The notes beneath the pieces are model-generated. The model saw only the letters and a list, made by a program, of their open reading frames with translations. It did not search any database and was not told the DNA's origin. A program made the position numbers and the translations under genes. Below, piece after piece: positions 10,678 through 30,874 of a stretch of 64,000 nucleotides of DNA (positions are counted from its first letter, which is position 1; the number at the start of each line of letters is the position of its first letter). Origin of the DNA: Dimorphilus gyrociliatus (lineage: Eukaryota > Animalia > Annelida); NCBI GenBank assembly GCA_904063045.1, contig CAJFCJ010000005.1:2123988-2187987 (forward strand). Direction: 5' to 3'.

Positions 10678-12944
10678 ATGAACATGGTAAATTTGCAAGT
10701 TTTGCTATCATTACTCGTATTTACATTGGTAAACTTGGTTCAATCTTTTCCGGATGGATCAGAAAATTATCATCGTAACGTTACGCTGAAATATCCAAAC
10801 TTTTATAGAGTTTTATGGAAATTTGATGATAAAGAAATTACTTTTGAAGTTCAAGTAAAAACTAAAAGTTGGGTAGGATTTGGTCTCTCTCCAAATGGAG
10901 GGATGAAAGGTAGCGATATAATTATTGGTAGAATTAATCAAGATAAAGTTTTCTTTGAGGTAAAATTTATCTTCAAAACTTTCATTTCTATAATAATTAC
11001 AAGAGAATAATACGAATAGGATCGTCACGCTAAAGGTGAATTTGAACCTATTAGAGATAAACACCAGGATTGGATATTAATATTTGGAAAATATGTTAAT
11101 GATTATACAGTATTAAAATTCAAGAGGAAAATCCTAACATGCGATCCGGAAGATAGAGAAATAACTGTAAAAATTTGTTTCTTATTCAAGATTTACTTTT
11201 AATCATTTTGAATATTTTAGCACGGAACATCAAGATTAATATGGGCTTATGGTGACGATAATTCCAACGATAATCCAAACGTTTTTAACAAACATAAAAA
11301 TGATAATAGGGGAACTTTTAGTGTTCAATTGTTGTCGTTTTTAGTACCGGAAAATCACGATGATCTTCTCAAAGATACTAGACCAATTGATTTTCGTATG
11401 AATAATGTAATTCATCTAAACAATTCTTAATATAAGATAGGATTACATAACTTTTTTTCCAGTTTTCACTTCCGGCAAATAGGCATACATTTTATCAATG
11501 TGAGATGATTAAATTTCCGAAATTATCGGGAAAGCATCAGATTATATCTGTAAGAATTTATTGTATATATTTGAATGAACTTTTATTAATATAGTTAAAC
11601 TACAGATTGAACCGATAATTGATGAGAATCATTCGCATTTGATTCATCATCTCCTACTAACAGGATGCCATCGAAGTCATAATATTACAGATGAACATGT
11701 TGGTCAAAGTTACGAGTGTTACGTTGATGAAATGAACATGAGAACTAAATTTGACAAGTGTGATAAAATGATTTATACTTGGGCTGTGGGAGGGAGTGTA
11801 AGTATCATTTATACAGTATACAATAGCCTCTAAGATTGTTACTGATTTTAGAAATTCTTCTTTCCTGACGATGTTGGATTTCCATTGGGAGGGGATGATG
11901 ATCCAATTTATGGAAAATTGGAAATTCATTACGATAATGTTGATTATCAGGCTAACGTTACTGATAGATCTGGTGTTCGACTACATATTACTGATAAGCT
12001 TCGTAAATATGATGCTCAAGCACTTCGAATTGGACATGCAGTAACTCCATTTCAAATAATTCCGCCAAAATCAACAAATTTCTTATCGGTTGGAGTTTGT
12101 CCTGAGCGTTGTATGGATCAGGTGAATAGAACAATGCAAATATATTTTGTATATAGTTGATATATTTATAAAACAAATGAATTATTAATTAAGGTCTTTA
12201 ACGCTGCTGGCATAAGGGAGATAAAAGTGTTTCTTACTCTAATGCACGCACATTTAAGAGGAGTTAGCATAGTTCTAAGACACTACAGAAATGGCATTGA
12301 ATTAGAACCAATAACAAATGAAGAATCATACGATTTTAATTTTCAAGAATTCAATCTTTTAACAAAACCAAGAAGCGTTCAATTGGTAAAAGGAATTCTT
12401 TTAATTAGCATTTACTCTAATTTATTCAAAAAATTCTATTCTTTTAAGGGTGACCGACTAGTTTTAGAATGTTTTTATGATACAAAAAAAGATGATCAAG
12501 CAATTTACGGTGGCTTGTCAACAAATGAAGAAATGTGTTTGGCATTTTTACACTATTATCCAAAAATTCCTTTAAGCGGTTGCGAAAGTAGGCCACCTTA
12601 TAACCAAGTATCTGAATTTTTTAATCCAAACAAGACAATAGATTGGAATGATCTGGCAACTAGGAAAAAGTTACAAAATATAGCCTATTCAAATAAGATT
12701 GTTATGGAATGCGAAGATGGAAATATTGAATATGAGGTATTTTAATAATTATCCTCTATTTGTTATCTTACTCATTCTCTTCTTTTTTATTTTAAAGGAT
12801 AACAGGCAAGAAATAGAGATAAGTAAGACGAAAACAAAGTATAAAAGTGACAAATGCAAAAATTACCAATTAAACTCAGCTGTGTATCACTATCCTAATT
12901 GTTTTGTCATTTTTTACGTGTTTTTATGCCTTAGATTGCTGTAA
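10678..12944 (+). CDS. MOXD1: MOXD1/DBH-like copper type II monooxygenase, copy A (single DOMON + monooxygenase module, 9 exons, C-terminal hydrophobic tail)
   Basis: Signal peptide; DOMON WVGFGLSPNGGMKGSD; Cu ligands IHH, EIHYDN, MHAH, EEMC; eight phase-0 GT-AG introns (first 10960-11019, last 12738-12798); ends CFVIFYVFLCLRLL*; symbol is family-level, orthology untested. Confidence 0.9.
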
Positions 12945-13111: not shown

Positions 13112-16100
13112 ATGTCAATTTTAAAGCTTATTTTATATGTTTTACCGCTTTGCGGTGTGACATGCTTTCCTAATCCATCTGAGGATTATCCGCATAACAC
13201 CATTCTAAAAAGTCCAGATATTTATCGACTCTTTTGGAAAAATGAAGTAGATTCCATTACCTTTGAAATTCAGGTGAGGACTAAAGGATGGGTCGGCTTT
13301 GGTATATCTCCAAATGGTGGAATGGCTGGAAGCGATATATTTACGGCTTGGCTAGAAGATGGAAAGGTTATTCATCACGTAAGTATATAATTGTTTCAAT
13401 AAGAAATTGTTAGCATAAAACCAATACAAATATTCTTAGGACCGACATGCCTTGGGAACTTTTCGTCCTCTTAAAGATAAACTACAAGATTGGAATTTGA
13501 TATTTGGTAAAGAAATTGACAACTACTCAGTCTACAAATTCAGTCGTAAATACGAGACGTGCGATAAGGAGGGAGATAGAGACATTAAACTTGGAACGGT
13601 AAGGGTTATATGGTCGTATAATCCGGTTAGACCGTTTTCGGAGGAGCAAGATATCTTCTATCACGGATTTCTTAACCGAGGCACGGCGTCCTTAAACCTT
13701 CGGGTCAACGATCTAAAACAAAAGAGAGAAGATCTATTAAGAGATGCTTTCCCAGTAGAACTGACGGTTAAGAACTTCGTTTTACCTCATAATATTCACA
13801 CAACATACGTCTGCTCTTTTTATAATATTAATAGAATTTCTTTTAAACATCATGCCATTGCTGGTGAACCGATTCTAAACGCAAATGTACCGTCCAGACT
13901 TCACCATTTAATTGTCTATATTTGCAATCCGAAAGCGGCGAATTACAGTGCATATCTTGGAAAAGATTCCAATTGTCTGGATGTTAGGGATCTGGCCAAA
14001 CATTGTGACTCTTCTCTCTATGGTTGGGCTGTTGGAGGCACTACATACTATTTACCACCCCATGTCGGAATACCTGTAGGAGAAGAAGAGCTTATAGTAA
14101 TGACAGAAAGTCACTATGATAATAGCAATTTCCAAGAAGGAATTGTTGAGAATTCTGGATATCGTTTATGGTTTACTGATAATCTAAGGCAATATGATGG
14201 CACAATATTTGCAGTTGGCATCGAGGTCTCTCCCTTTCAGATTATACCTCCTAGGGAATCGAGTTTTACATCAATTGGCCATTGTCCAGCGGAATGTCTC
14301 AATGACGGATTTGACGAATCCGATGTTGAAGAAGTAAAGATTATTGGCTATTTACCTCATTCTCATCTCGTAGGCATTAGAATAAGATTAAGGATTTTTA
14401 GAGGGGATGAAGAACTTGAACCTATCGTAATTGAAAATTCGTACGATTTTGATTATCAAAACTTTTTACACCTTCAAACTGAAAGAGTATTAAAGAGAGG
14501 TGATAGGCTAGTGACCGAATGCGATTACAATACATTAAACCGTAAGGAAGAAACACTCGGTGGTTTAGCTACCGAAAATGAAATGTGTATAGTATTCTTA
14601 ACAGTCTATCCTAAGTTTGCAGTTAGAAAATGTGGCAGTCATCCAGCGACCAGTCAATTTGCTTCATTATACGACGATCCGGTCAAAAGAATTACTGATT
14701 GGAGTAATCCTCAAAAGAAGAAAATTGCTCAAGAGATAGCTTTAAGTAATGATATTGAATTGGAGTGTGACGGTAACGGTATCAAATTGAAATCGCATAG
14801 AAAGATTCTTTCGATGCCGTTGGTAAGCCATTTTTACGCCAAGATTGATACTTGCGATAGGTTCCCTATTCCTTCAGAAAAATATCCTCATAGCGTCGTT
14901 TTAAAAGAGCCTGACTTTTATAAAGTCTATTGGAAGGTTGTTGAAGATGTGATAACTTTTGAAATTCATGTGAAAACAAAAGGTTGGGCTGGGTTTGGTA
15001 TATCTCCCAACGGAAATATGATTGGAAGTGATGTAATTATGACATGGATGGGAGAGAACGGACTTAAATTTGACGATCGTCATATTGTAGGATATGTTGA
15101 ACCTCTTATCGATGATGTTCAAAATTGGCATCTCATTACTGGTAGAAGATACGGGGAATATTTGATTGTGAAATTCTATAGGGAATTAGATACTTGCGAT
15201 ATAGATGATATTGCTATTGGAGAAGCAACGACGCGAATTGTATGGTCGTACAGAAATGAAGTGGTTATCTCTGACGAGGCATTTTATCACGGATTTACTA
15301 GTAGAGGAACTAAAAGTGTCCACCTATTGGCGGACGAAACAGACGATCGCGACGGAAAACCAATAGAGGGGGCCTTCCCTTTTGATGTTAGAATAGCGAA
15401 CTTTTCTATTCCTCATACAGTTGACACATTTTACCGATGCGAAATTTTCAAACTTCCAGAATTAGACAAGAAGCATCATATAGTTGCTGTTGAAGCTATA
15501 GTAGATGAAAGGAATCCGTCAGTTCCTCATCATCTACTTCTTTATGGATGTAACGCAAATATAAATCTAACTGACGAAGATGTTGGTAAAGGATACGAGT
15601 GTTACAATCGAAAAGCGAACTATAACGGCCGCTACGATTCTTGCGAAGCCATACTATTTGTTTGGGCCATTGGAGGTAAACGTCAATATTTTCCGGACAA
15701 TGTTGGATACCCAGTAGGTAGAGACACTGATGTAAAATTTCTCAGACTGGAATTTCATTACGACAATCCATCATTTAAAAAGAATATTGTCGATACTTCT
15801 GGGTTAAGATTATGGTTGACTGATAAAATTCGAAAGGAAGATTTACAAACAATAGAAGTAGGCCATGTTGTAACACGTGCACAAGTAATACCTCCTATGA
15901 CTCCATTATTTGTATCCTTTGGGGCTTGTCCGTCCCAATGTCTTTCGGAGGCAATGGAAAGAGGAGGTGTAGAAGAAATCACTATCGTATCCATTCTGTT
16001 ACACGGCCATCTATTATCTAAAGCTTTAAAACTAAGACATTTCCGTAATGGAGTTGAACTTAAACCATTGGCCGATGATCCGTATTACGATTTCAATTTT

Positions 16101-16511
16101 CAAAGTTTTGTGTCATTGAAGGAGCCTCGAAAAGTACGAAAAGGAGATTGGTTGCTCCTCGAATGCGACTATGATTCTTCGGATAGGATGAAGGTTACTC
16201 GTGGTGGCTTGGGAACTAGAGACGAAATGTGCATTGCTTTCCTTACGTCATACCCTAATATACCTTTGTCACATTGTCTTTCGCATCCGCAAATCCCTGA
16301 ACTAACCAAGATAGGTAAGTTAGAGGAGTTGATATGGACGAGGGACATAATTGAACAGCATCAAATGAATGTTGCAACACCAAACGTTACCATTAAATGC
16401 AACCACGGAAGTATATTACATCCTATTGATACGAAAGATATAACTTTGCCATCAGTAAACGAAGAATACACACTACCGAATTCAACATGCCAACTTAACG
16501 GTCAAGCTTAA
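13112..16511 (+). CDS. MOXD1/DBH-like monooxygenase, copy B: two tandem DOMON-monooxygenase modules, about 1112 aa, one intron (13379-13439), no hydrophobic tail
   Basis: Exon 1 13112-13378 (signal peptide, DOMON start) joins a 3072-nt exon 13440-16511; module 1 LHH/ESHYDN/PHSH/NEMC; module 2 PHH/EFHYDN/LHGH/DEMC; linker CDRFPIPSEKYP; ends CQLNGQA*. Confidence 0.93.
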
Positions 16512-18012
16512 AGGTTGAAAAAGATTTTAATGCTCATTTTAAACGTATTTATTAAAGATAGAGTATAATCTTTGTTTTTGTGAATTATTTAACTAATACT
16601 TTGCAAAAGTAGGATGTGAAAAATATCTCTATTTCAAGAAGAAAACATTTCATGTGAATTTTAACGCACTTATATAATACAAGCAGATTTTTAAACATTG
16701 AGATAAAGAAAAACTTGTCAATAGCATTTTATAGAAAGCGTTTACGGTAGTCCAATTGTTGAGGGAACTATATAGATCTTCTCTCTAATATAGATTCACC
16801 ATGGGGTACACTACTACTTTCCAGTTATTATCACTTCATATCTCTTGGGTAAATTTCATTTTAAACTTATATAAATCGATTAATCGAGCAATATTGGCGA
16901 AATAATCAATAAATTTGATAGAATTTATGAATAAATACAAAAACTTAAGACTTGTAAAAAGGAGTATTAAACATAGGTAAGACGGTGGAAAAAGGACGTT
17001 GTTCACATAGGGTTCAGAATATGTAACTGTTACTCCCCTTATGAGTATGAATAATGAAGTTAGGCATACGATATATGGTCAAGCTTCTGCTTTAGATATT
17101 GCAATTGCTCAAAACATTTGGTCTCATTGTTGCTATGATATGAGAGAGCGAAAAAAAAGCTATTATCTAAGGGGCATTTAGGGGCGAGGCGATTTATTGA
17201 TTTAGGGATAAGTTTATCTTAAAAGCAAGACTTCCTTTGCATTTATCTAATTCAACGTAACACTTTCAATATGTATATATCTGTATGTCAAAAATTGTAA
17301 ACAGTCTATTAAAATAAAGTCGCTACTTGTGTGACTATTTCAAAGGAAAGGAAAATAAAATATATATATAGAAGAATGAGGTCAGACATATGCAATAATT
17401 TCTACAATTATATATAAGGGAATAGCGTAAATTGAATGATTAATAAATCTAAGTTTTCATAATTACATTTTCTATCTAATTAGAGAAAACGAAATTATTT
17501 CACCTCTGTACTTTTCTTTCTATTGTTTTTATTCCCTTTTTCAACTTTTTTTCAACCCCGAATTTAATGAAATAGAAAAGAATTGAAAACAAAACTATTC
17601 AATTTTCTTATCGATAAATAATAATTAAATATATAAATGTATTAAAATAATAAGAATAGGAAAGTGTTGATCTATTTTCGAATTATGAATATTCAAGAAA
17701 ATAAAAACTGAATTCATTGTTGAAGACTGCTTGAAATATAGTCTATTATGAATAGAATTTACTTTACCCTACCACTAACATTCGATATTTTTATGAGTAA
17801 CATTTTCGATTGGTTGTTATTGAAAATTTTATTTTGAGATTATCAATATATCTATTTATTGCTTGTTGTTTCCTTTTCAACAATAACGCCATAAAATATA
17901 AAATTATTGTTGTTAAAATACTCTTCAGATGGCGTTGTCTTCGTTCTGCATTTCCTATTAAAGAAATATTAATATTGAAGATTTTTAGCTTTGGAAGAAA
18001 TTCTACCTCGTC

Positions 18013-21000
18013 ATGAGTAAACTTGTAATTCTTTACTGCTTTGTAGTTCTGAAGTTAATAAATGCTTTTCCAAACCCAACTGAGACTTATTCATATGGAA
18101 CTGTACTAAGAGATCCTGATATATATAGGGTATTCTGGAAGGAGGATGGTCATTCCATTACGTTTGAGCTTCATGTAAAAAACAAAGGTGGATGGGTAGG
18201 CTTTGGAATTTCTCCAAATGGAGGAATGAAAGGTAGCGATATATTTACTGCAAAACTTGTAAATGGTCAATTAACTTTCGAGGTAAGGCGTGCTTTCTCT
18301 TAAAACGTTATTGATAATATATTAATATTTCATTCGAACAAATAGGATCGCCATGCCGTCGCAAAGTCAAAACCAATTAAAGATAAATTACAAGACTGGG
18401 AAGTTATTGTTGCGAAGGAGGTCGGTGATCATGTCATATATAAGATAAAGAGAAAGCTACAAACTTGTGATCCAGAAGAGGACAGGGAAATAAAGGTAAA
18501 TAGTACGTCAACAAAACTTGAATGACTGTTATAGGAGGTTACTATTCAAAAGCCCGGAACTGTGCGTTTAATATGGGCGTATGGTTCAATAACTTCTGGA
18601 ACAGATTACTTAACCCAACATAGCGATTCAACAAAGAGAGGAACTAGGAGCGTTCAACTTATAGCAGGTGAAATTCCCGAGAAGAAACTACCAGATGGAC
18701 TTAAAACTATAGATATTAAAGTGAACAATGTAGGATTATGAAATATATTTTATTATAACTTTGTTACTTTAGCTATTTATTCCATTTTTTAGTTTACTCT
18801 ACCGAAGAATAGAGATACCTTTTATCGATGTGAAATAGTGAAACTGCCAAAACTTCCTGGCAAGCGTCACATAGTTGCTGTAAGAAATAAAATTGTATAT
18901 ATTATCCATAACTGTTGCTAATATGATAAATGCTATAGTTCGAACCTATATTCGATACGAAACATCCGGAAATTCTACATCATATATTCCTTTTTGGGTG
19001 CAATAATTATCTAAATATAAACGACAGTCATACCGGAAGTGACTATGAATGCTATACAGATCAGACTAATATGGGTACTTCGAGGGATCGTTGTAACATA
19101 GTTATGCTGGCTTGGGGTGTAGGTGGACAGGTAAGTTTGCGATAGAGCGAAGAAGGATAGATAGTTTCACTATTTTATTATTATCCTATAGAGATACGTA
19201 GTACCTGATGAAGTTGGTTTTCCAATTGGAAGAGATGAAGACCCCTCTTACATTAGATTCGAAATGCACTACGATAATCCAGGACTCAAGGAAAATATAG
19301 TCGACAATTCTGGATTTCGTTTATTTTATACTGACAAACTACGCAAATACGATACAAGCGTTTTGGAAGTTGGACATAAAGTTACCCGGTTCCAAATCGT
19401 TCCACCGAACGTTCAAGATTTTGTTACCTTTGGAAAGTGTCCATCCGAATGTTTGGAGGAGGTAAAAAGAAACAATAGCACATTAGTCTATAAAAAGTTT
19501 AAGCTACATTTCTCTTTAAAAAGGTCTTTGACAAAGCCGGTCTAGAAGAAGTTACAGTATTCGCCTCTATCCTTCACGCTCATATTAAAGGTGTTAAAAT
19601 AAAGCTAAAGATATTTAGAGGTGATAAGGAATTAGAGCCACTGATGGAAGAATCAACATACGATTTCAATTATCAAGATATAATAAACCTACCAAAATTA
19701 AGAAAAATACGAAAAGTTTGTTGATAATAGTCCTATCTCATCTATAATTTATTAATAATAAATAAATATTTTGCTATAGGGAGATCGTTTAACAGTAGAG
19801 TGTACATATGATACTTTGGGAGAAAATCAGGCCGTACTTGTAAGAAAACCTTTATTTTTTATATTAAAAATACATTAAAACTTAAATTTTTCAAAGGGTG
19901 GCCAATCGACAAGACAAGAGATGTGCTTAGCTTTTATTAGCTACTATCCCGCTCTACCAATATCTAAATGCGTCAGTGAGCCTATACGTGCTAAAACTGC
20001 TCCAATATATCAAAGTATTAAGGGAGGAACTATTGATTGGACAAGAAATAATCAAATAGAAATTCAACGAGAAATAGCGAACAGTGAAGAAGTTCAAGTT
20101 TATTGTGACAATGGACAGATTCGCTATAAGGTAATATCTTTAATATTTAAAAAAGTTAACAACGTTTATCCTAAAGAAACGTATATGCCCTCAAACAGGT
20201 TGATGATACAAAGATAACAGTATCCAATAACTATGTACCCTACACTAAACCTAATCTTTGCGATGGATTTCCAAGTAAAAATCTTTTATATTTCTCATTC
20301 AATATATATACAATATATAGCAAATACATATAGCTATATATACATGTTGTCTGGCTTATTTTGAGGGCTTGTATACAGAGAATTGTATTCAATATATGTT
20401 GATCAGGTTCAGAATCAGGGACTATTATTCACACTCAGATTTTCTTTTGTAGTGCCTTCTGAAAAATACCCTTTCAGTGAAATCCTTAAAGAACCTAATG
20501 TATACAAAGTCTATTGGAAAGTCGTAAAAGAAATGATTACGTTTGAAATTCAAGTGAAAACTAAAGGATGGGTTGGTTTTGGAATCTCTCCAAATGGAAA
20601 TATGAAGGGTAGCGACGTTATTATGGCATGGATGGCAAATGGCAAATTTCACTTACAGGCAAATACATTAATACATTATATTTAGTTTGCTTCTTTAGAC
20701 GTTATAAAATCAATTTTCTTATTCATTAAATTTATATAGGATCGTCACGCAGTTGCAAAAAGTGAGCCTGTATTAGATAAGAAACAAGACTGGAAACTTA
20801 TTTGGGGTAAAACCTATCATGAATTTTCAATATACAAATTTGAAAGAAAGTTGAAAACCTGTGACGAGGAAGATATTGATATTGGTGTAAGTGATATGTT
20901 TAGTTTTAGATATTTTCAGGGATTTGAATAGAATGTGTGTAACACTGTTAGTGAAAACTGTACTTGAATTAAGATAGGCTTTTAATTGTAGCCTTTTTTA

Positions 21001-22828
21001 TTATATATTGGTATTTCTCTCACAGACTGGTACGACTAGGCTTATTTGGTCGTACAGTACAGCCCTTATGGGCGAAGGAGACAATTTTGTCGGCCATGCA
21101 ACAACCAATCGTGGAACTAAAAGTGTTCTACTGTTAAACACTAAATCTGAAAAGAGTGATGAAATGAAACTAGCGGATAGTGAACCTATTGATTTCAGAA
21201 TAGGAAACGTACGTTTACTTGAAACGTATTATAGCTATTTTATAGTTAATGTATTGTATTTCAGTTCTCTTTACCATCGGACGTTAGCACTTATTATAGA
21301 TGCGAAATGTTTAAACTTCCCGATTTAACAAAGAAACATCATATCATTGCGGTAATATATTCTAAAACAAATTTTAATTCCCTACGATTATCAATTCTTA
21401 TTTTCTAGGCTGAACCAATAATCGATACCCGCCACCCCTCCCTACTTCATCATATTTTCATTTATGGTTGTGGTCATGATCATGAAATCAAGGACGAACA
21501 CGTTGGTCAAGGGTATCGATGTGGTAGTGATGAAATAAATATGGCTGGTCAGTTTGATCAATGTAATATTGTATTTTTCGCTTGGGCAGTTGGTGGCAGT
21601 GTATGATATTATTTAATATGCTCTTCTATTTCAAACACTTGACAATGTTCTTAATTATCAGTTGTTGTTTCTTTCAGAGGTTCTTCTTCCCCGATGATGT
21701 TGGACTACCAATAGGTTCTAGTGGTGATTCAAAATATTTTAGAATGGAAGTGCACTACGACAATCCAAGTTTTCAAGAGAATGTTACCGATACTTCTGGC
21801 ATACGCTTCTGGATAACTGATAAAGTGAGAAAGAATGATCTTAGAATTATGGAAGTTGGACACGACGTTACACCTAAACAAATTATTCCACCAAGAAGCT
21901 CAAATTTCCTTACTGTCGGATCATGCCCTGAACAGTGTTTAAGCAAGGTCCGCAAGTTTCTTGTATATAGTATAATTTAAATTACTTTTCCTACTAATTG
22001 ATAGGCATTTGAGGCATCCGGAAGAGAAGAGGTTACTATTTTCTTAGCCTTACTACATGCTCATTTAAAGGGTGTTAGAATGAAATTAAGACACTTTAGA
22101 GATGGTGTTGAATTGGAACCAATCAATTATGAAAAAAGCTACGATTTCAATTTCCAAGAATACAGTTTACTACCAAAGTTTAGAACATTAAAAAAGGTTA
22201 CTTTTAACAAGTCTTTAATATATTCTTTTAATTTTCTTCAATCCTTCCCCTCCCTCTTCCACCTTTTTAGAATGATAGATTAGTTGCTGAATGTACATAT
22301 GACTCATCAAACGACGATAAACCCACTTTTGGAGGCCTCGCAACGGAAAATGAAATGTGTTTAGCGTACGTTGCACATTATCCACCTATTCAGCTATCAA
22401 GATGCCATACCCAACCTGCCAACTTAAAATATTCCATACGTCAGAAGGATAGCATTGATTGGTTGGATGAAAAAGTTAAAGCAGATCTACAAAAATCGGC
22501 TAAATCTAGAGATGTTGACATAACTTGTTCTAATGGCAAAGTCTACTACTTATCAAAGGTAAAACGAAATCTTACATCAATTTTGTTTTTTATAAAAAAA
22601 AATAATAAAAAACTAATTAAGTGTAAAAAAATTAAATGACTTTTTGCGTATTTTCAGGACCAAAGCAGAAATGTAACACTTGAACCATATAAGAAAGAAT
22701 ATAAAGCTCCAAATCTATGCGACAAAAAGGAACCAGGTCCGAATGATTCGTCAAGAGCTTTTGTTAACTCTTTTCTATTTTCCATTTTATGTATTTTCTA
22801 TACTGTTAAACTCTCGATGAATTATTAG
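18013..22828 (+). CDS. MOXD1/DBH-like monooxygenase, copy C: two tandem DOMON-monooxygenase modules, 19 exons, C-terminal hydrophobic tail
   Basis: Module 1 LHH/EMHYDN/LHAH/QEMC; module 2 LHH/EVHYDN/LHAH/NEMC; modules joined through phase-1 intron 20275-20452 giving CDGFPMPSEKYP, matching the copy B linker; one GC-AG intron 20659-20739; ends FLFSILCIFYTVKLSMNY*. Confidence 0.88.
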
Positions 22829-23504
22829 ATATCTTTCTCTTATAAACGTTACTTTTATATCAATTTTAGATGAGTTTCTTTTTTTTCACTAAAGGAACGA
22901 GGGCGCCATCTTACTGTTGGCGCTTTTATTTTTATTATCCCTAACAAAACTTTTATATATATATAAAATAGTTAATATGCATTCAGGGGGTTTTTTTTGG
23001 AGTCGTGTCATGGACGGGTCATCAAATATATTGTATAGTTTCTGTTTGCTTGTTTGTTTCCTTCTTTCTCTTCTATTACTTCCGTTAACTATTCAAATTT
23101 TTGCTGTAGTAAAAGATTGTAAAATAAAGATAAGAAATACAAGTTTTACATTATTTTATTCTTTTGCATATAATATATATATTTCCAAAGAAATGACACA
23201 TATTATACAGTATATAAACTATATATACATGGAATAATAATAATCGGAAAACTGGTAGGAAATATTCACCAGCTCAATAATAAGTTTGTCAGCATTTTCA
23301 ACATTTAAACGAAAAATTAAAGCCATTTTTTAATAAATAATATTCAATAAAAGTACAAAAAATTTTTTTACAAATATTCTATTATGAAATATTGAGAAAT
23401 TAGAAGAAATTGGAAAGGAAAGGGAAGAGAGGAATGAATACAAAATTGAAATGAATTTATTACATAGTTAATTATATATTTGTTTTATTTTTGAGCGAAA
23501 AGTT

Positions 23505-23533: not shown

Positions 23534-24128
23534 ATACTTTGAAGCACCGAAGGAAATACGGAAAAAAACAAGAGGGCGTTACTGATACTAGTTAGTTTCG
23601 TAGAGTTTTTCGAATAAAAATCTGAGTTCCGTTGGAGGCAGTCTTTTACAGCTTTTACACTTGAAGCATCAAGAACGTTGAATTTCAAAACTTTGGAAGA
23701 GTCAACGCAACCTTTCATCATTTGAAATAGTGTTTGGAAGTTTCTGCAAGCTTCTTCCAAGTATTCCCTTAAAAGGAACCTGGAAGAAATCGAACAGGCA
23801 AGTATTTAAGAAAAGTTCGGGGTATTGGCAAAGCCCAGCTAAAGCTATAAGTAATTTGGCATCGTTTGAAGCGAATTGCTTGTAATACAATTGAAAAAGT
23901 AGTTTGCAAGCTACTTTTTTTTGAAAAATTCTCTGATAAGGCTAAAGATTAGCTGTGAATTTTCCACGATCCCTTTGGTCCACGTAGAACGGACGTGCGT
24001 AACAACCGCCAACGTAGCAGCAGCCGACGGGGATAAAAAATAATTTTGTGACACTGCTCAAACGTGGTTAAGTGCTCTCGGACTACGCAACGTTGATAAA
24101 ACGTGTTAGTCTACAACCGATTACGACA

Positions 24129-25151
24129 ATGAACGGTACCGTTTTGGCAGAGAACATTGGAGAAAGTCCAGAAATTGTTAGAAAAGAGGAAGCTAAAGTA
24201 GAAGTTAAGGAGGAAGAAAATGTAGACGATAGTAGCGCCGATAGCGAAGAAGATTCCGACGAAGATGGCGGGGAAGATCAAGCAATACGACAAGCAAAGT
24301 TGGAAAAGACGAAGAAAGTCTTGGGCAGCCGTCGCGTAATGCATATAAAGTATGGAGAATTTACACTAACTGTGTTGAAAGATATTGATAGACGACTTGG
24401 AATTGTTCAGGAAGCTCTTATGACGGAGATTAATTATATTTTAGAAACTGACCGAATTAATTGTCGTAACCGCCAGGGGTTTTATAAAATTTTATACGGA
24501 GCTCAGCATCAAATTGACGAGCTACGCCTTCAAGTTCAACAACTTAGCCAAATTTGTAAGGAAAAACAGAATCATCGAAGTACTACTAATCTAGAATCAA
24601 GCGATGAGGAGGAGGCTAGTTCATTCCTATTCTCGGAAACGATTGTTAGAGCATTTACGGAAAGTGACGACGGCTATACTGCAAATATCAGCTTAGGAGA
24701 TATTGATAAAGCTAAGGCAATGGATTCTACTCGAAAGAGAAATGTTAACGAAAATATGACTGATTTACCTAGAAAAAAATCAAAGAATGACGAAAAACAA
24801 ACTACTCACGACAAACAGGAAAAAAGTGAAAATAAAGATACTTCCATTGATGAAAATACCGCAAATGCTAAAAATTATTTTTCTAAAGGATTTAATCTTC
24901 TTGGTATTAAACATTTGGAACACCTCCGAAATATTTTGGAACGTACTCTAATTGATCAAACTGAAGAAGAATTTCAAAGAAATTTAAGCGAGGTATGCGT
25001 ACACAATGCGGAAATTCGTCAAAATGCTTTAATTAGCCAAAGGATTGAACGTTTGCGTAACATCACTCACTTGATGACACATTTGATGGATTTAATGGAA
25101 TATATTGTTCAGAGCGCAATAACGATTCTAACGATACCGAGTGAAGAATAA
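24129..25151 (+). CDS. Intronless hypothetical protein, about 340 aa from the first ATG (ORF track starts at GTG 24072); acidic/low-complexity segments and predicted coiled coils
   Basis: Over 1 kb open frame in AT-rich DNA; acidic tracts DDSSADSEEDSDEDGGED and ESSDEEE; no recognisable domain. Confidence 0.65.
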   Translation: MNGTVLAENIGESPEIVRKEEAKVEVKEEENVDDSSADSEEDSDEDGGEDQAIRQAKLEKTKKVLGSRRVMHIKYGEFTLTVLKDIDRRLGIVQEALMTEINYILETDRINCRNRQGFYKILYGAQHQIDELRLQVQQLSQICKEKQNHRSTTNLESSDEEEASSFLFSETIVRAFTESDDGYTANISLGDIDKAKAMDSTRKRNVNENMTDLPRKKSKNDEKQTTHDKQEKSENKDTSIDENTANAKNYFSKGFNLLGIKHLEHLRNILERTLIDQTEEEFQRNLSEVCVHNAEIRQNALISQRIERLRNITHLMTHLMDLMEYIVQSAITILTIPSEE

Positions 25152-25421
25152 GAAAACCAGTATGTCTCGTTCGAAAATGAAAAAAAAAACAAGGGAAATT
25201 TTTTTTGTTTCGACTATTTATTCGGTTTTTTTACTACAGTCTGAAAACGATTAATGTTTTGTTTTATTATTTCCCGCTTTATCAACTTCCGTTTTGCTCT
25301 AATTGTTACCAGTTTACACAAATATAGGAAGTACAGAAATTGAAGAGTTTCATTCTTTAAAAATTTTTTAAACAATCAGTCTTATCAAAAACTTATCTTA
25401 ATTTGCTAAATTTTATAATTA

Positions 25422-27122
<1,701 letters not shown>

Positions 27123-27186
27123 AACTAGCTATACAATGTATCTAATAAAAAATTAAAACTGCTTTTAATTGTTTACATTTGAGATC

Positions 27187-27196
27187 GAAACGGAAA
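27187..27196 (+). promoter_or_regulatory. ISRE/IRF-E-like element GAAACGGAAA upstream of the IRF-like gene
   Basis: Exact GAAANNGAAA match with a third GAAA at 27200-27203, in the 106-bp WDR13-IRF gap. Confidence 0.4.
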
Positions 27197-27291
27197 GTAG
27201 AAAAATTTATTCTCATAGTAAGTGATAGATGTCGCTTCCTCCACACATAGATTATAAAATAAGCGGGTCAGTTAGTTTCGAAAGGTTTCCT

Positions 27292-27789
27292 ATGAAGAGC
27301 AGAAGACAGTTACCAGATTTTCTAAGAAGCCTCTTAGATAATCAAAGAAGCAATACTGAAAGCGATGTTGTTTGGGTTGATAAGAGCGAAAAAACATTCA
27401 AGATTATTTGGAAAAGAATTCGGAATAATACAAATTCTCATACCATTTATCACTTGTATAGAAATTTTAAAAATAACTCGAAACTACCTCTAAACCAAGC
27501 TAAACGCAACTTTCGATCAGCACTTGACGCCTGTGTACGAGATGGCAAATTAAAGAAACTGAAAGCAAACGAGGGCCAGTGTCGAATGTATCAATTTACA
27601 GACAATAAAAGTATTGAAAAGAACGATTATGTGGAAAAAGACGACATTTCATCAATATTCACAAAAATACCGAAACCTGTTACCGACATGGAAAATTCTT
27701 GTGAGTCATCTTTTGGGGAATCGGAAGATATCTTGTCTATTTTGAGTTGTGAGATTTTCGAAAACTTGAATGATCTTCTGAAAGCCTAA
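27292..27789 (+). CDS. Divergent interferon regulatory factor-like protein (IRF DNA-binding domain only, about 165 aa; alternative upstream ATG at 27229)
   Basis: VVWVDKSEKTFKIIWK, AKRNFRSAL and RMYQF align with IRF DNA-binding-domain motifs; donor GTAAGT at 27218 and acceptor AG at 27274-27275 suggest a 5'UTR intron that removes ATG 27229, leaving MKSRRQLPDFL as an IRF-like start. Confidence 0.75.
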   Translation: MKSRRQLPDFLRSLLDNQRSNTESDVVWVDKSEKTFKIIWKRIRNNTNSHTIYHLYRNFKNNSKLPLNQAKRNFRSALDACVRDGKLKKLKANEGQCRMYQFTDNKSIEKNDYVEKDDISSIFTKIPKPVTDMENSCESSFGESEDILSILSCEIFENLNDLLKA

Positions 27790-27841
27790 AGTACTATTTA
27801 CATTTTTTGGATGCTTAGTGGAATTTTTTCGTTAAGCATCC

Positions 27842-27843
<2 letters not shown>

Positions 27844-27872
<29 letters not shown>
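27844..27872. repeat. T20-A9 homopolymer tract between the convergent IRF-like and MORC 3' ends
   Basis: Read directly: T 27844-27863, A 27864-27872. Confidence 0.9.
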
Positions 27873-27999
27873 CATACTATATACTAATATTATAATAAAT
27901 TTATAATAAACTATTTAATCTATTTCATAAAGAAAACATAAAGTTAGGATATAATTTAATAGTACAAAACAAATTGTAAACATTTTCTCTCCCTATTCA

Positions 28000-30874
28000 T
28001 CATTCATGCTTAACTTGTATTTGTTGTTGATATTGTTCTAATAAGCTCATATAATGTCTTCCTAATTGTTCATTCGAATAGTTTTCTATTCCATTTGTAA
28101 GTCTTGCGAAATGTTCGTCGTCATTGCATAAAACCCTTAAAAAGTCTTTGACTGAATTAATGAGAGAGAGAAATATGTTATTTGTTGTATCTCTTTCTAA
28201 TCTCATGTCTTCGAATTTTTTCTTTAATGATTTGTCATACGTTTGAATGAATTCTTTATGAGGGAAACGAATTAAATCTTGTACAGTTAACCGTTTTATA
28301 TCTTCAGCACTCTGATTCCATTTGGGAGGTCGAAAGTATTCTAAACATTTTTTAAAATTAGAAGCTAGTTTCGTGTTTTCAGATGTATCATCATCAACTT
28401 CGCCAGAGACCACATCAACCTCTGCATCTTCTATACTCGAACTTTTTGTTTTCCTTTTCTTTGTGGCAGAAAAACTATCCATATCGTGATACTGTTGTCT
28501 GTCTCCTCTTCTCTTTGGAATTAATTTGTTCAATTTATTTGAATTGACTAAATCTTCTTTGTCGTTCTCTGACGAATGATGACGAATTCTAGATATTCTT
28601 TCGAAGCATTGCTCCCTCTTATCAGAGAGTATCATGTCCGTATGTGAATTTTCTTCAGCTAACTTTCGTTGATGACGACGGTAGTCCTCCTCTATTTCGT
28701 CAAACGTTGGAATTCGTTGCTTTTTTAGATTGCCGCCATTAACAATTGCGGGAGGATCATCTTTTTTATTACAATTTGCCAGCTGCTTATTTGAATGATT
28801 TCTACATCTCCAATCGTCCCTAACGTCGTCAAACTAAGGGAATTTAAAAGATATAAATGGTCATGGTAAAGAACTTGAACAAACCTTTCCATAAGGGATA
28901 ATTCGCCATTTGAAACAATCGTGGCATTGTATTCTTTTAGGTACTGATAGACATCTTTTTTTAGCTAAATTTGGATCGGGAGCAATGGTCCAGCTTTGCT
29001 TATTTCTTTTATATCCAAACGAGATCCAGAAATCTTCTATATCGTTAGTATCAAAATTCATGTCTTTATAATATTGAATCAATCCGTCAGAAAGCGCTTT
29101 CTGAAGCATTTTAAACTCCTTAGCATCCGCAAAGTCTTGTTTATTGTGAGTTGGTTCCAGTATTTGATAAGGTATATCAACTATTCCGACAATACCTCCG
29201 TAATGTAATGATAATTCGCTTTGGGGTCTATATTTCTGATACATTTTGATAAGTCTGCCACAATTATATATAAAAATCCCATCTTGATATCGATTTTCAA
29301 TCTTCATACCGTAGATAAAAGATATTACTTTTGTTTGTCTCACTGCTTTCTCTAAATTCTGACAGATAATTCGCTTTTCCTTAGCCTCGTCAGCCACCTG
29401 AGATGCTCTAAGTTTTTCCTGTTATTGTTTTCATTTTTAATTTAATACAAATAATAATAATCAACAATCTATGTTATATTGTAGTATAAAGTTACCTTAT
29501 TGATTTCAACATTCAATTCCTTTAAACTTTTATCTGTTTTTTTATTTAAATCGGATATTTTACTATTGATCTCACGCAATAAATTTTCGATACATTTCAA
29601 GTCATTTTGCGCTGATTCTAAATCCTTTAAGGCTTTAACCCTAAATCTATTAGATGTAAAAGTATACATTCGAGGTCTATATAATTCGTGAACGAGAAGC
29701 CGAGATTTTATCTTTCTACCTCTCAAGTAAATTATCATAGTGATTTCATTGTACAATATCGCCAGATAAGATCTAAACGAAACTGTTTCTGGTTTATACC
29801 GCAGCAATTCTTCTTTATCAATGTTGTCAGTTTGACTTTCTGTCCAAGAATTTCCTGATGATATTAAGATATCATTGTTTACAGCTTTAAAATCAAGTTC
29901 TGTGTCCCCATTGTTAAGTAATTTCAAATTGTAAATTGCTACAGCCGTTCCTGAAATGCCTTTTATTTTGTGAAATTGTTTTTCAATGTCTTTTAAAGTT
30001 TTCCAAGGAGAGTAACGAAGTACAACGCCAACTTCGTGATTGTGTACGTCTATAGATTTCGATGGAGGAATGTAGGGTCTGAAACTATCAACTTGGAATT
30101 GAGGCATAGCGACAACAATCTGTTCAAAATATACATTGAGTATTATAAATATTGATCCATTAGACTAAACATGACACTGCCTAGGGAAAATGCAATAGAG
30201 CGTTTCGGCAAAAGAAAATATTTTTAAAACCACATGAATAATAGGAAATTCTTTTTTCTAGCCAATTTCAAAATAGGTTGTTTTTGCATTATAGCAGATT
30301 TAAATCTTATCGATTGTTTATAGAGATAAAAAATAACAATACTATGAACACGCCCATTTATGCAATACAAATTAAACTAAATTAAACTAGTTTTTACTAT
30401 TTGATGAACATTTGCTCTGCTTTTCAGCGAACTTACCTCATTTAGTCCTTCGTTTTCGAGAAACGTTCTTGATAATAATATGACTGAATAAGTATCATCT
30501 TTCTTTGTTAAGAGAATTACATCGTTTGCAATTCTCATAGATCCACTCTTGAGTCCGTTTCCGTACATTCCTATTGAATCTAAATTATGTAATCGCTTTG
30601 AAGATCTTCCAAATTTAATAACATCGGAAACTTCTGTAGGACCGATTCCCTGACCATCATCTATAAACCAGATAATGTTACCTCCTCTTAAATGGTCATT
30701 TTTCTCGACATCGATATTTAAATACTTTGCTCCGGCATCTCTTGCATTGTCCACGATTTCAGCAAGGGCACCAAAGAGGAACTCGTGCGTTGTAGAGTTT
30801 GTGTGTAAATATGAAAAACTTAGTTCTGCTTTGGAAAATCGACTATAATCTGAACTTAGTCTTTCTTTTGGCAT
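28000..30874 (-). CDS. MORC2: MORC family GHKL ATPase with CW zinc finger (MORC2-like, about 800 aa); exons 30874-30437, 30119-29496, 29397-28885, 28832-28000
   Basis: YLHTNSTTHEFLFGALAEIVDNARDA, DDGQG, IGMYGNGLKSGSMRI, LEPTHNKQDFADAKE, CW finger QCHDCFKWR...DDWRCRNHSNKQLANC across intron 28833-28884; coiled-coil-like C-terminus. Confidence 0.93.

What the first reader, a model, noticed from the sequence alone, without database searches (positions are those of the whole stretch)
13112..22828. Covalently doubled DOMON-copper monooxygenases with all catalytic sites intact
Copies B and C each encode two complete DOMON + monooxygenase modules in one polypeptide, joined by a conserved CDxFPxPSEKYP linker. 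All five modules in the cluster keep the DBH/PHM CuH ligands (HH and the H of HYDN) and the CuM ligands (HxH and the M of EMC). DBH, TBH and MOXD1 are known as single-module chains that act as dimers or tetramers. A single-chain pseudo-dimer with two diverged active sites could catalyse two sequential hydroxylations, or fix asymmetric flip-flop catalysis in place. I do not recall this architecture being described, but cannot exclude it.
Basis: partly seen in the sequence, partly recalled or inferred. Interest (0 to 1): 0.85.

Follow-up and report, generated by a model that had tools for sequence, protein, structure and literature searches.

The report
Doubled copper monooxygenase genes, worm
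Two neighbouring genes of the tiny marine worm Dimorphilus gyrociliatus each encode, in one RNA and one protein chain, two complete copies of a dopamine-beta-hydroxylase-like copper enzyme; this is real and unstudied, but one gene is already in public databases and similar doubled predictions exist in other organisms.

Summary
Copy B (13112-16511) carries both DOMON + copper-monooxygenase modules and the linker CDRFPIPSEKYP in one uninterrupted 1019-codon frame. A spliced 3563-nt RNA contig from a public run encodes the whole 1112-aa protein. Copy C (18013-22828, 19 exons, 1147 aa) joins its modules through a 76-nt mini-exon. Both flanking splice joints are seen in RNA contigs of two runs. All six copper ligands are present in all five modules.

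The novelty claim is only partly right. The window is Dimorphilus gyrociliatus, and C is identical to the deposited protein DgyrCDS3617. A third doubled gene (DgyrCDS1700) lies on another scaffold. About a dozen of the 150 best database cluster representatives are two-module proteins from oyster, crabs, centipede, a protist and algae, though several look like merged gene models. I found no paper describing the layout.

Trees show one fusion before the B/C duplication. In a B-type relative from an unidentified organism, module 1 has lost five of six ligands while module 2 is intact. This argues against an obligatory two-step reaction and fits an asymmetric single-chain pseudo-dimer. Substrate and activity are unknown.

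Verdict: a real, lineage-restricted variant of the MOXD/DBH family, of moderate interest.

The parts
10678..12944 (+). Copy A: single-module DOMON + Cu monooxygenase gene. It has 9 exons and encodes 596 aa, with a hydrophobic N-terminus and a hydrophobic C-terminal tail.
   Evidence: The model was built by homology and canonical GT..AG sites only, with no RNA check. Ligands are intact. Its eight introns sit at the same alignment columns, all in phase 0, as those of C module 1 and C module 2.
13112..13378 (+). Copy B exon 1: signal-peptide-like N-terminus and the first part of DOMON 1.
   Evidence: The splice to 13440 is shown by RNA contig L001.
13379..13439 (+). The only intron of copy B (61 nt, GT..AG, phase 0). 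It lies at the same position as intron 1 of A, C1 and C2.
13440..16511 (+). Copy B exon 2: the rest of module 1, the linker, all of module 2 and the stop codon, in one open frame. The protein has no hydrophobic C-terminal tail.
14853..14888 (+). Linker of B, CDRFPIPSEKYP (residues 561-572). It consists of the last conserved Cys of module 1 followed almost at once by the mature-N-terminus motif of module 2.
18013..22828 (+). Copy C: 19 exons, 1147 aa, two modules, with a hydrophobic C-terminal tail. It is identical to DgyrCDS3617.
20199..20274 (+). Junction mini-exon of C. It is homologous to the 5' half of the ancestral last exon and ends in ...NLCDGFP plus one base.
   Evidence: The joints on both sides are seen in RNA contigs of runs X1 and X3. 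Its homology to the last exons of A and C2 is shown.
20275..20452 (+). Junction intron of C (178 nt, GT..AG). It is the only phase-1 intron and the longest one. There is no in-frame ATG upstream of module 2.
20453..20658 (+). First exon of C module 2. It starts inside the FP|MPSEKYP motif and carries no signal-peptide coding. The next intron, 20659-20739, is GC..AG.

Best explanation
B and C are genuine fused genes of Dimorphilus gyrociliatus. Each encodes a secretory-pathway protein made of two complete MOXD/DBH-type copper monooxygenase subunits (DOMON, CuH domain, CuM domain, C-terminal segment) in one chain.

Origin. A 9-exon single-module gene like copy A was duplicated in tandem and fused in frame. 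The fusion removed the hydrophobic tail of the upstream unit and the signal peptide of the downstream unit. The fused gene then duplicated into B and C, and B afterwards lost all introns but the first.

How it works (inferred). The N-terminal signal takes the chain into the ER. C keeps a hydrophobic, GPI-signal-like tail and is probably membrane-bound. B lacks that tail and is probably soluble. Each module can bind two coppers and hydroxylate a C-H bond with ascorbate and O2. The substrate is unknown, as it is for MOXD1/2.

The tether is very short. The linker Cys lies about where DBH Cys596 lies, and that residue is disulfide-bonded to its own DOMON domain. The next DOMON begins two residues later. 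The modules also lack the Cys pair that cross-links DBH dimers. I therefore read the fusion as a covalent replacement for subunit dimerisation, that is, a single-chain pseudo-dimer. Its two halves have diverged (39-48% identity). Module 2 is the indispensable catalyst, and module 1 is active in this species but dispensable for catalysis in a relative.
For: Shown:
- The ORF is continuous across the B junction.
- A spliced RNA contig covers all of B.
- RNA joints link the C modules in two runs.
- C is identical to DgyrCDS3617.
- Each Pfam domain is found twice.
- All ligands are intact.
- Intron positions and phases are identical in A, C1 and C2.
- The careful tree is (A,((C1,(B1,P3m1)) 99/97,(C2,(B2,P3m2)) 95/98)), inside a 100/100 clade (repeated).
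- Module 2 has no start codon or signal peptide of its own.
- The AlphaFold model has pLDDT 91.2 and pTM 0.66. Its module 2 superposes on human DBH 4ZEL_A residues 46-592 with Z 45.6 and rmsd 2.4 A over 518 residues.
- In P0003, module 1 has lost 5 of 6 ligands while its 1040-codon frame stays open and module 2 is intact.

From the literature:
- DBH has the C154-C596 disulfide, the C528/C530 interchain bonds, an asymmetric open/closed dimer and a proposed flip-flop mechanism (PMC4846438).
- MOXD2 has a signal peptide plus a GPI signal, and loss of that tail gives a soluble form (PMC4125168).
Against: - No enzyme activity, copper content, protein size or oligomeric state is known.
- I could not read the model's inter-module contacts or PAE. 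A pTM of 0.66 is only a hint that the modules pack in a defined way.
- The equivalence of the linker Cys with DBH C596 rests on the position in a structural alignment that ends at 592. It is not a sequence match.
- Signal peptide and GPI signal were judged by eye, with no predictor.
- B shows 15 non-synonymous against 10 synonymous differences between two strains, so constraint on B may be relaxed.
- The organism of P0003 is unknown. It could be a further paralogue rather than an orthologue.
- The two active sites may simply work independently.
Confidence: 0.6

Rival explanations
1. Polyprotein (zymogen). The doubled chain would be cut between the modules in the secretory pathway into two separate single-module enzymes, as in the Lymnaea stagnalis amidating-enzyme precursor with four PHM domains.
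For: There is a precedent for several copper monooxygenase cores in one precursor that is processed into separate enzymes (PMC6669573). The model has one low-confidence loop (residues 549-554) just before the linker. B has an Arg-Lys pair at 543-544.
Against: No dibasic site is conserved. C and DgyrCDS1700 have none in the linker, and the sites in P0003 and B lie at different places. Only two or three residues separate the last conserved Cys of module 1 from the first conserved residues of module 2. The Cys probably ties the linker to DOMON 1.
Confidence: 0.1
2. Two independent enzymes on one chain. Both modules would be active and would not communicate. The fusion would merely co-express and co-localise two diverged catalysts, possibly with different substrates or for two successive hydroxylations.
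For: All ligands are intact in both modules of B, C and DgyrCDS1700. The modules are only 39-48% identical. Module-1 and module-2 clades have been kept apart since before the B/C duplication.
Against: Module 1 of P0003 has lost its copper ligands but is kept as an open frame. This shows that a non-catalytic role is enough to retain it. The very short, Cys-anchored tether suggests a fixed geometry. The data cannot separate this reading cleanly from the best explanation.
Confidence: 0.25
3. Artefact. B and C would each be two adjacent single-module genes wrongly read as one, through a merged gene model or a chimeric assembly.
For: Several two-module predictions in other taxa carry a signal-peptide-like hydrophobic stretch between the modules and look like merged models: Eriocheir P0014, Priapulus P0015 (flagged LOW QUALITY by NCBI) and Anneissia P0018.
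Against: In B, the junction has no stop codon, start codon or signal peptide. RNA contigs span the junctions of both genes. The same layout occurs in an independent assembly, seen in two runs (P0003). In DgyrCDS1700 the junction lies inside one exon.
Confidence: 0.02

Closest known systems
MOXD1 / MOXD2 (DBH-like monooxygenase proteins 1 and 2)
   Same: They share the domain order DOMON - Cu2_monooxygen - Cu2_monoox_C, all six copper ligands, an N-terminal signal and a C-terminal hydrophobic (GPI-type) tail in A and C. The best-scoring named relatives are MOXD1/2 from ascidians, lamprey, mouse, Lingula and nemerteans. The substrate is unknown in both cases.
   Different: Here two full units sit in one chain with a 2-3 residue tether. 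The worm clade (100/100) has no orthologue among named proteins, and its position relative to MOXD1 versus MOXD2 is unresolved. B has no tail.
Human dopamine beta-hydroxylase (PDB 4ZEL), a disulfide-linked asymmetric homodimer
   Same: Module 2 of the model superposes on a whole DBH subunit (Z 45.6, rmsd 2.4 A, 518 residues). The ligands align. DBH works as a dimer whose two subunits differ (open and closed), for which a flip-flop mechanism was proposed (PMC4846438).
   Different: Sequence similarity is lower than to MOXDs (196 bits against 250-390). The segment that in DBH holds Cys528/Cys530 and two long helices is shorter here and has no Cys. The pairing here is by peptide bond, between diverged halves.
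Lymnaea stagnalis amidating-enzyme precursor with four PHM domains and one PAL
   Same: Several catalytic cores of the same copper monooxygenase superfamily are encoded in tandem in one polypeptide (PMC6669573).
   Different: That precursor has PHM cores without DOMON, also carries a PAL domain, and is cut into separate enzymes. Here there is no PAL, the full DBH-like subunits include DOMON, and there is no conserved cleavage site.
Uncharacterised two-module DOMON-Cu monooxygenase predictions in other eukaryotes (Ostrea edulis XP_056009644.1, Scylla, Strigamia T1IHN5, Rhodelphis transcript, Spirogloea, Edaphochlamys)
   Same: They have the same doubled domain list, with both ligand sets intact.
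   Different: In each, the two modules are each other's closest relatives, so they are independent doublings. Their linkers are 50-150 residues long. None has been studied, and some are probably merged gene models.

Membership tests
Copper type II ascorbate-dependent monooxygenases (DBH/MOXD/PHM superfamily) | Cu2_monooxygen (PF01082) and Cu2_monoox_C (PF03712) above Pfam's gathering score | tested here: met
   Both families score 205-255 bits against cut-offs of 30 and 23, with two stretches each in B and C.
Copper type II ascorbate-dependent monooxygenases (DBH/MOXD/PHM superfamily) | CuH site with three His and CuM site with two His plus one Met | tested here: met
   All six ligands are present in A, B1, B2, C1 and C2. 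They align to DBH H262, H263, H333, H412, H414 and M487.
Copper type II ascorbate-dependent monooxygenases (DBH/MOXD/PHM superfamily) | Two-domain beta-sandwich catalytic fold | tested here: met
   The AlphaFold model has pLDDT 91.2. Module 2 scores Z 45.6 against DBH and Z 25-29 against PHM. Module 1 is modelled at equal confidence but was not listed separately against DBH.
Copper type II ascorbate-dependent monooxygenases (DBH/MOXD/PHM superfamily) | Copper- and ascorbate-dependent hydroxylase activity | not testable with these tools
   This needs recombinant protein and assays.
MOXD subfamily (MOXD1/MOXD2) | Groups with MOXD1/2 rather than with DBH/TBH or PHM | tested here: inconclusive
   All the named best hits are MOXD1/2, and DBH scores lower. 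However, no DBH, TBH or PHM sequences were in the trees, and the worm clade's sister group is unresolved.
MOXD subfamily (MOXD1/MOXD2) | N-terminal signal peptide and C-terminal GPI or membrane signal | tested here: inconclusive
   A, B and C have hydrophobic N-termini, and A and C have hydrophobic tails, while B has none. This was judged by eye, with no predictor available. The MOXD2 features come from PMC4125168.
DBH / tyramine beta-hydroxylase proper | Dimerisation domain with the interchain Cys pair (human C528, C530) | tested here: not met
   No Cys lies between the Cys after the EMC motif and the C-terminal Cys pair in any module. The segment is shorter, with only one helix of about 11 residues predicted.
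Multi-PHM zymogen (Lymnaea type) | Conserved dibasic cleavage sites between catalytic units, and a PAL domain | tested here: not met
   No dibasic site is conserved among B, C, P0003 and DgyrCDS1700. There is no PAL domain.

The most novel reading that the evidence does not exclude
These proteins would be natural single-chain versions of the asymmetric DBH dimer. One half (module 2) does the chemistry. The other half (module 1) has become a dedicated partner that gates or supports it. Module 1 still holds copper in Dimorphilus but is already a pseudo-enzyme in a relative. That would make them a ready-made system to test the disputed open/closed 'flip-flop' mechanism of this enzyme class, and would show why the family doubles again and again.
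Probability: 0.25. Interest if true: 0.7.

Novelty: new variant of a known kind. Interest (0 to 1): 0.48.

Why it matters
DBH-type copper monooxygenases make noradrenaline and octopamine. Their relatives MOXD1/2 have no known substrate. Whether the two subunits of a DBH dimer alternate between open and closed states is unresolved.

A natural, expressed, covalently linked pair of diverged subunits lets each half be mutated separately in one polypeptide. That is not possible in a homodimer. A relative with one dead half adds a natural control.

The data also show that covalent doubling of this enzyme has happened repeatedly in eukaryotes, and apparently twice in this one small genome. This hints at a general advantage of fixing the dimer.

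On the practical side, several public two-module predictions are probably merged gene models and should be treated with care.

Tried and rejected
1. Two separate genes or a chimeric model. Rejected by the continuous ORF and the RNA contigs.

2. Internal start for module 2. In C, the frame upstream of 20453 has no ATG before a stop, and the first in-frame Met lies inside DOMON 2. In B, the only nearby Met (residue 548) is not followed by a signal-like stretch.

3. Polyprotein cleavage. No dibasic site is conserved (see the rival explanations).

4. DBH/TBH orthology. The best named relatives are MOXD1/2, and the DBH dimerisation Cys pair is absent.

5. A single origin of all doubled genes in this genome. 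An AU test rejects placing DgyrCDS1700 module 1 with the other module 1s (p 0.009). Gene conversion between its modules remains possible.

6. Sequence alignment of the module C-terminus to the DBH C-terminus. It gave nothing beyond residue 514, so the Cys596 equivalence rests on the structural superposition only.

7. Literature searches for the doubled layout found nothing.

8. Look-ups in the scan's notes by sequence and by words added nothing on this family.

9. Identity of the organism behind P0003 (runs SRR23372228/9) could not be established with the tools left.

10. Strain polymorphism by module (3 syn/7 non against 7 syn/8 non) gives too few sites to compare constraint.
Full report
**What is there**

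The window is low-GC eukaryotic DNA with short introns. It holds three tandem genes of the DOMON + copper type II monooxygenase family on the + strand.

- **Copy A** (10678-12944) is a 9-exon, 596-aa single-module gene. I modelled it by homology and canonical splice sites only.
- **Copy B** consists of exon 1 (13112-13378), a 61-nt intron and exon 2 (13440-16511), giving 1112 aa. The frame 13452-16511 is open for 1019 codons. It runs through the end of module 1, the motif CDRFPIPSEKYP (14853-14888) and the whole of module 2. Pfam finds DOMON, Cu2_monooxygen and Cu2_monoox_C twice each.
- **Copy C** (18013-22828) has 19 exons.

**Transcript evidence**

- A protein search returned a 1112-aa protein (P0001, 99% identical) carried by a 3563-nt Logan contig.
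- That contig matches 13081-13379 and 13431-16684 and lacks the intron. It is therefore a spliced RNA that spans the whole doubled reading frame with both UTRs.
- For C, I laid the contigs of four runs on 17900-22900. Fifteen GT..AG joints were listed.
- The two joints that matter are 20130|20199 and 20274|20453. They flank a 76-nt mini-exon ending in ...NLCDGFP and continue in MPSEKYP.
- Both joints are present in an RNA metatranscriptome run (X1, another strain judging by shared variants). They are also present in run X3, where a single 2485-nt contig runs from exon 1 through the junction into module 2.
- Assembling the exons gives 1147 aa with a stop at 22828.

**Identity**

My model of C is identical, residue for residue, to NCBI/UniProt DgyrCDS3617 of *Dimorphilus gyrociliatus*. 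The window is thus from that miniature annelid, whose genome paper reports median introns of 66 bp (PMC7854359). That paper does not mention these genes.

**Catalytic sites**

- The alignment to human DBH (4ZEL) places the HH pair, the H of HYDN, the HxH and the M of EMC of the modules on His262/263, His333, His412/414 and Met487. Residue numbers are from PMC4846438.
- All six ligands are present in A, B1, B2, C1 and C2.
- The AlphaFold model of the B allele P0001 has mean pLDDT 91.2 and pTM 0.66. Its only weak stretch is 549-554, just before the linker.
- Module 2 (570-1102) superposes on DBH chain A residues 46-592 with Z 45.6 and rmsd 2.4 A over 518 residues, and on PHM with Z 25-29.

**How the fusion arose**

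- Eight introns of A, C module 1 and C module 2 fall on the same alignment columns, all in phase 0.
- C1 has one extra intron.
- The junction intron (20275-20452, 178 nt) is the only phase-1 intron.
- B keeps only the first intron, at the shared position.
- The mini-exon is homologous to the first half of the last exon of A and C2, up to the conserved Cys. What follows is the motif FPxP(S/T)ExY, which in A, B and C directly follows the N-terminal hydrophobic leader.
- The fusion therefore removed the tail of the upstream unit and the leader of the downstream unit.
- Because 'FP' lies before the junction intron and 'xPSE' after it, an in-frame genomic deletion followed by intron gain in C is as likely as read-through splicing. 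I cannot decide between them.

**Phylogeny**

- A careful tree groups module 1 of C, B and P0003 (99/97) and module 2 of C, B and P0003 (95/98). A lies outside both, and the whole set forms a 100/100 clade.
- This means one fusion, then the B/C duplication, then divergence from the source of P0003.
- P0003 is a 1040-codon ORF found in two runs of an unidentified organism. It has the same intron-poor structure and an A-like gene upstream.

**A relative with a dead half**

- In P0003, module 1 reads QR for HH, L for the H of HYDN and QxN for HxH, and keeps only the Met. Its module 2 is intact and the frame stays open. Its module 1 branch is about twice as long as that of B1.
- This is the most informative new fact for mechanism. 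Module 1 can be retained without copper sites, so an obligatory two-step hydroxylation is unlikely for the B lineage. A structural or regulatory partner role is plausible.

**How rare is the layout**

- A full HMMER scan of 1.84 billion cluster representatives gave 5846 relatives.
- Among the best 150, twelve have two module-length matches. The named ones include *Ostrea edulis*, *Eriocheir sinensis*, *Priapulus* (flagged LOW QUALITY), *Anneissia*, *Strigamia*, a *Rhodelphis* Trinity transcript, *Spirogloea* and *Edaphochlamys*. *Scylla* appears.
- In each of these, the two modules are sisters, so the doublings are independent. Nearly all keep both ligand sets.
- Three of them (*Eriocheir*, *Priapulus*, *Anneissia*) have a signal-peptide-like hydrophobic stretch between the modules and are probably merged gene models. 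Others, such as *Ostrea*, *Rhodelphis*, *Scylla* and *Strigamia*, have no comparably hydrophobic stretch.
- A second search found a third doubled gene in the same worm on another scaffold, DgyrCDS1700 (1419 aa). Its junction lies inside one exon, with a 20-residue Pro/Thr spacer, and all its ligands are intact.
- The two modules of DgyrCDS1700 are sisters outside the A+B+C clade. An AU test rejects joining its module 1 with the others (p 0.009). This indicates a second doubling, or gene conversion between its modules.
- Full-text searches found no paper on the doubled layout.
- The nearest described precedent is the *Lymnaea* precursor with four PHM domains, which is cut into separate enzymes (PMC6669573).

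**Mechanism**

What is shown:
- There is one mRNA and one reading frame per gene.
- Each gene encodes two DBH-like subunits with complete copper sites.
- The two halves have diverged, with separate module-1 and module-2 clades.

What is inferred:
- The proteins enter the secretory pathway.
- C, and also A, is membrane-bound through a GPI-type tail, as described for MOXD2. B has lost the tail and is soluble, a change also seen in macaque MOXD2 (PMC4125168).
- The linker Cys corresponds in position to DBH Cys596, which bonds to DOMON Cys154 (PMC4846438). The modules lack the DBH interchain Cys pair, so the peptide tether would replace dimerisation.
- DBH crystallised as an asymmetric dimer, with one closed and one open subunit, and a flip-flop mechanism was proposed for it. 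A fixed asymmetric pair is therefore a reasonable reading, but it is untested.

Rivals are cleavage into two enzymes (no conserved cleavage site) and two independent active sites.

**Limits**

- There are no activity or protein data.
- I had no access to model coordinates or PAE.
- No signal-peptide or GPI predictor was available.
- Copy A has no RNA check.
- The source of P0003 is unknown.
- The RNA evidence comes from assembled contigs, not long reads.

**Verdict**

This is a real, expressed, lineage-restricted doubled variant of the MOXD/DBH family. It is already present, uncharacterised, in public databases, and it is paralleled by independent doublings elsewhere.

Noticed in passing
window 13112-16511 versus 18013-22828; L002 9692-13123: Copy B keeps 1 intron where its paralogue C has 18. 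The retained intron is the 5'-most one, as expected after recombination with a partial cDNA. The P0003 gene in another assembly has the same intron-poor structure, so the loss is old.
   Followed up: partly
window 20659-20739: The intron after the first exon of C module 2 starts with GC rather than GT (a GC..AG intron). The joint is seen in contigs of runs X3 and X4.
   Followed up: partly
window 19840-19896: C module 1 has one extra phase-0 intron. It splits an exon that is undivided (288 nt) in A and in C module 2. This is either a gain in C1 or parallel losses in the other two.
   Followed up: no
I did not test this.
   Followed up: no
L004 3001-5000 (DgyrCDS1700, residues 1-275): The deposited model of the third doubled gene starts with about 275 extra residues that include Thr/Glu-rich repeats. 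These are followed by a Met plus a leader-like stretch just before the FPxxSE motif. The N-terminal part is probably a merged upstream gene.
   Followed up: no
runs X1 and L001 (SRR30948329): Transcripts 99% identical to this worm's B and C occur in a metatranscriptome labelled coral metagenome, and weakly in one labelled invertebrate metagenome. A Dimorphilus-like worm seems to live in those samples. Its alleles differ from the window at shared sites.
   Followed up: no
window 20823-20973 and 20992-21142 (run X2): Low-depth contigs of an RNA run cover the 139-nt intron 20887-21025 without splicing. This may be unspliced precursor RNA or DNA carry-over.
   Followed up: no
P0022 (Styela clava XP_039261856.1, 2571 aa): An ascidian protein matches only the DOMON part of the module, eleven times in a row. 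It appears to be a long array of DOMON domains without the catalytic core.
   Followed up: no
window 24072-30107: Downstream genes include a WD-repeat protein (about 26218-27122) and, on the minus strand, a MORC-like gene with a CW-type zinc-finger motif (28861-30107). They appear unrelated to the finding.
   Followed up: no
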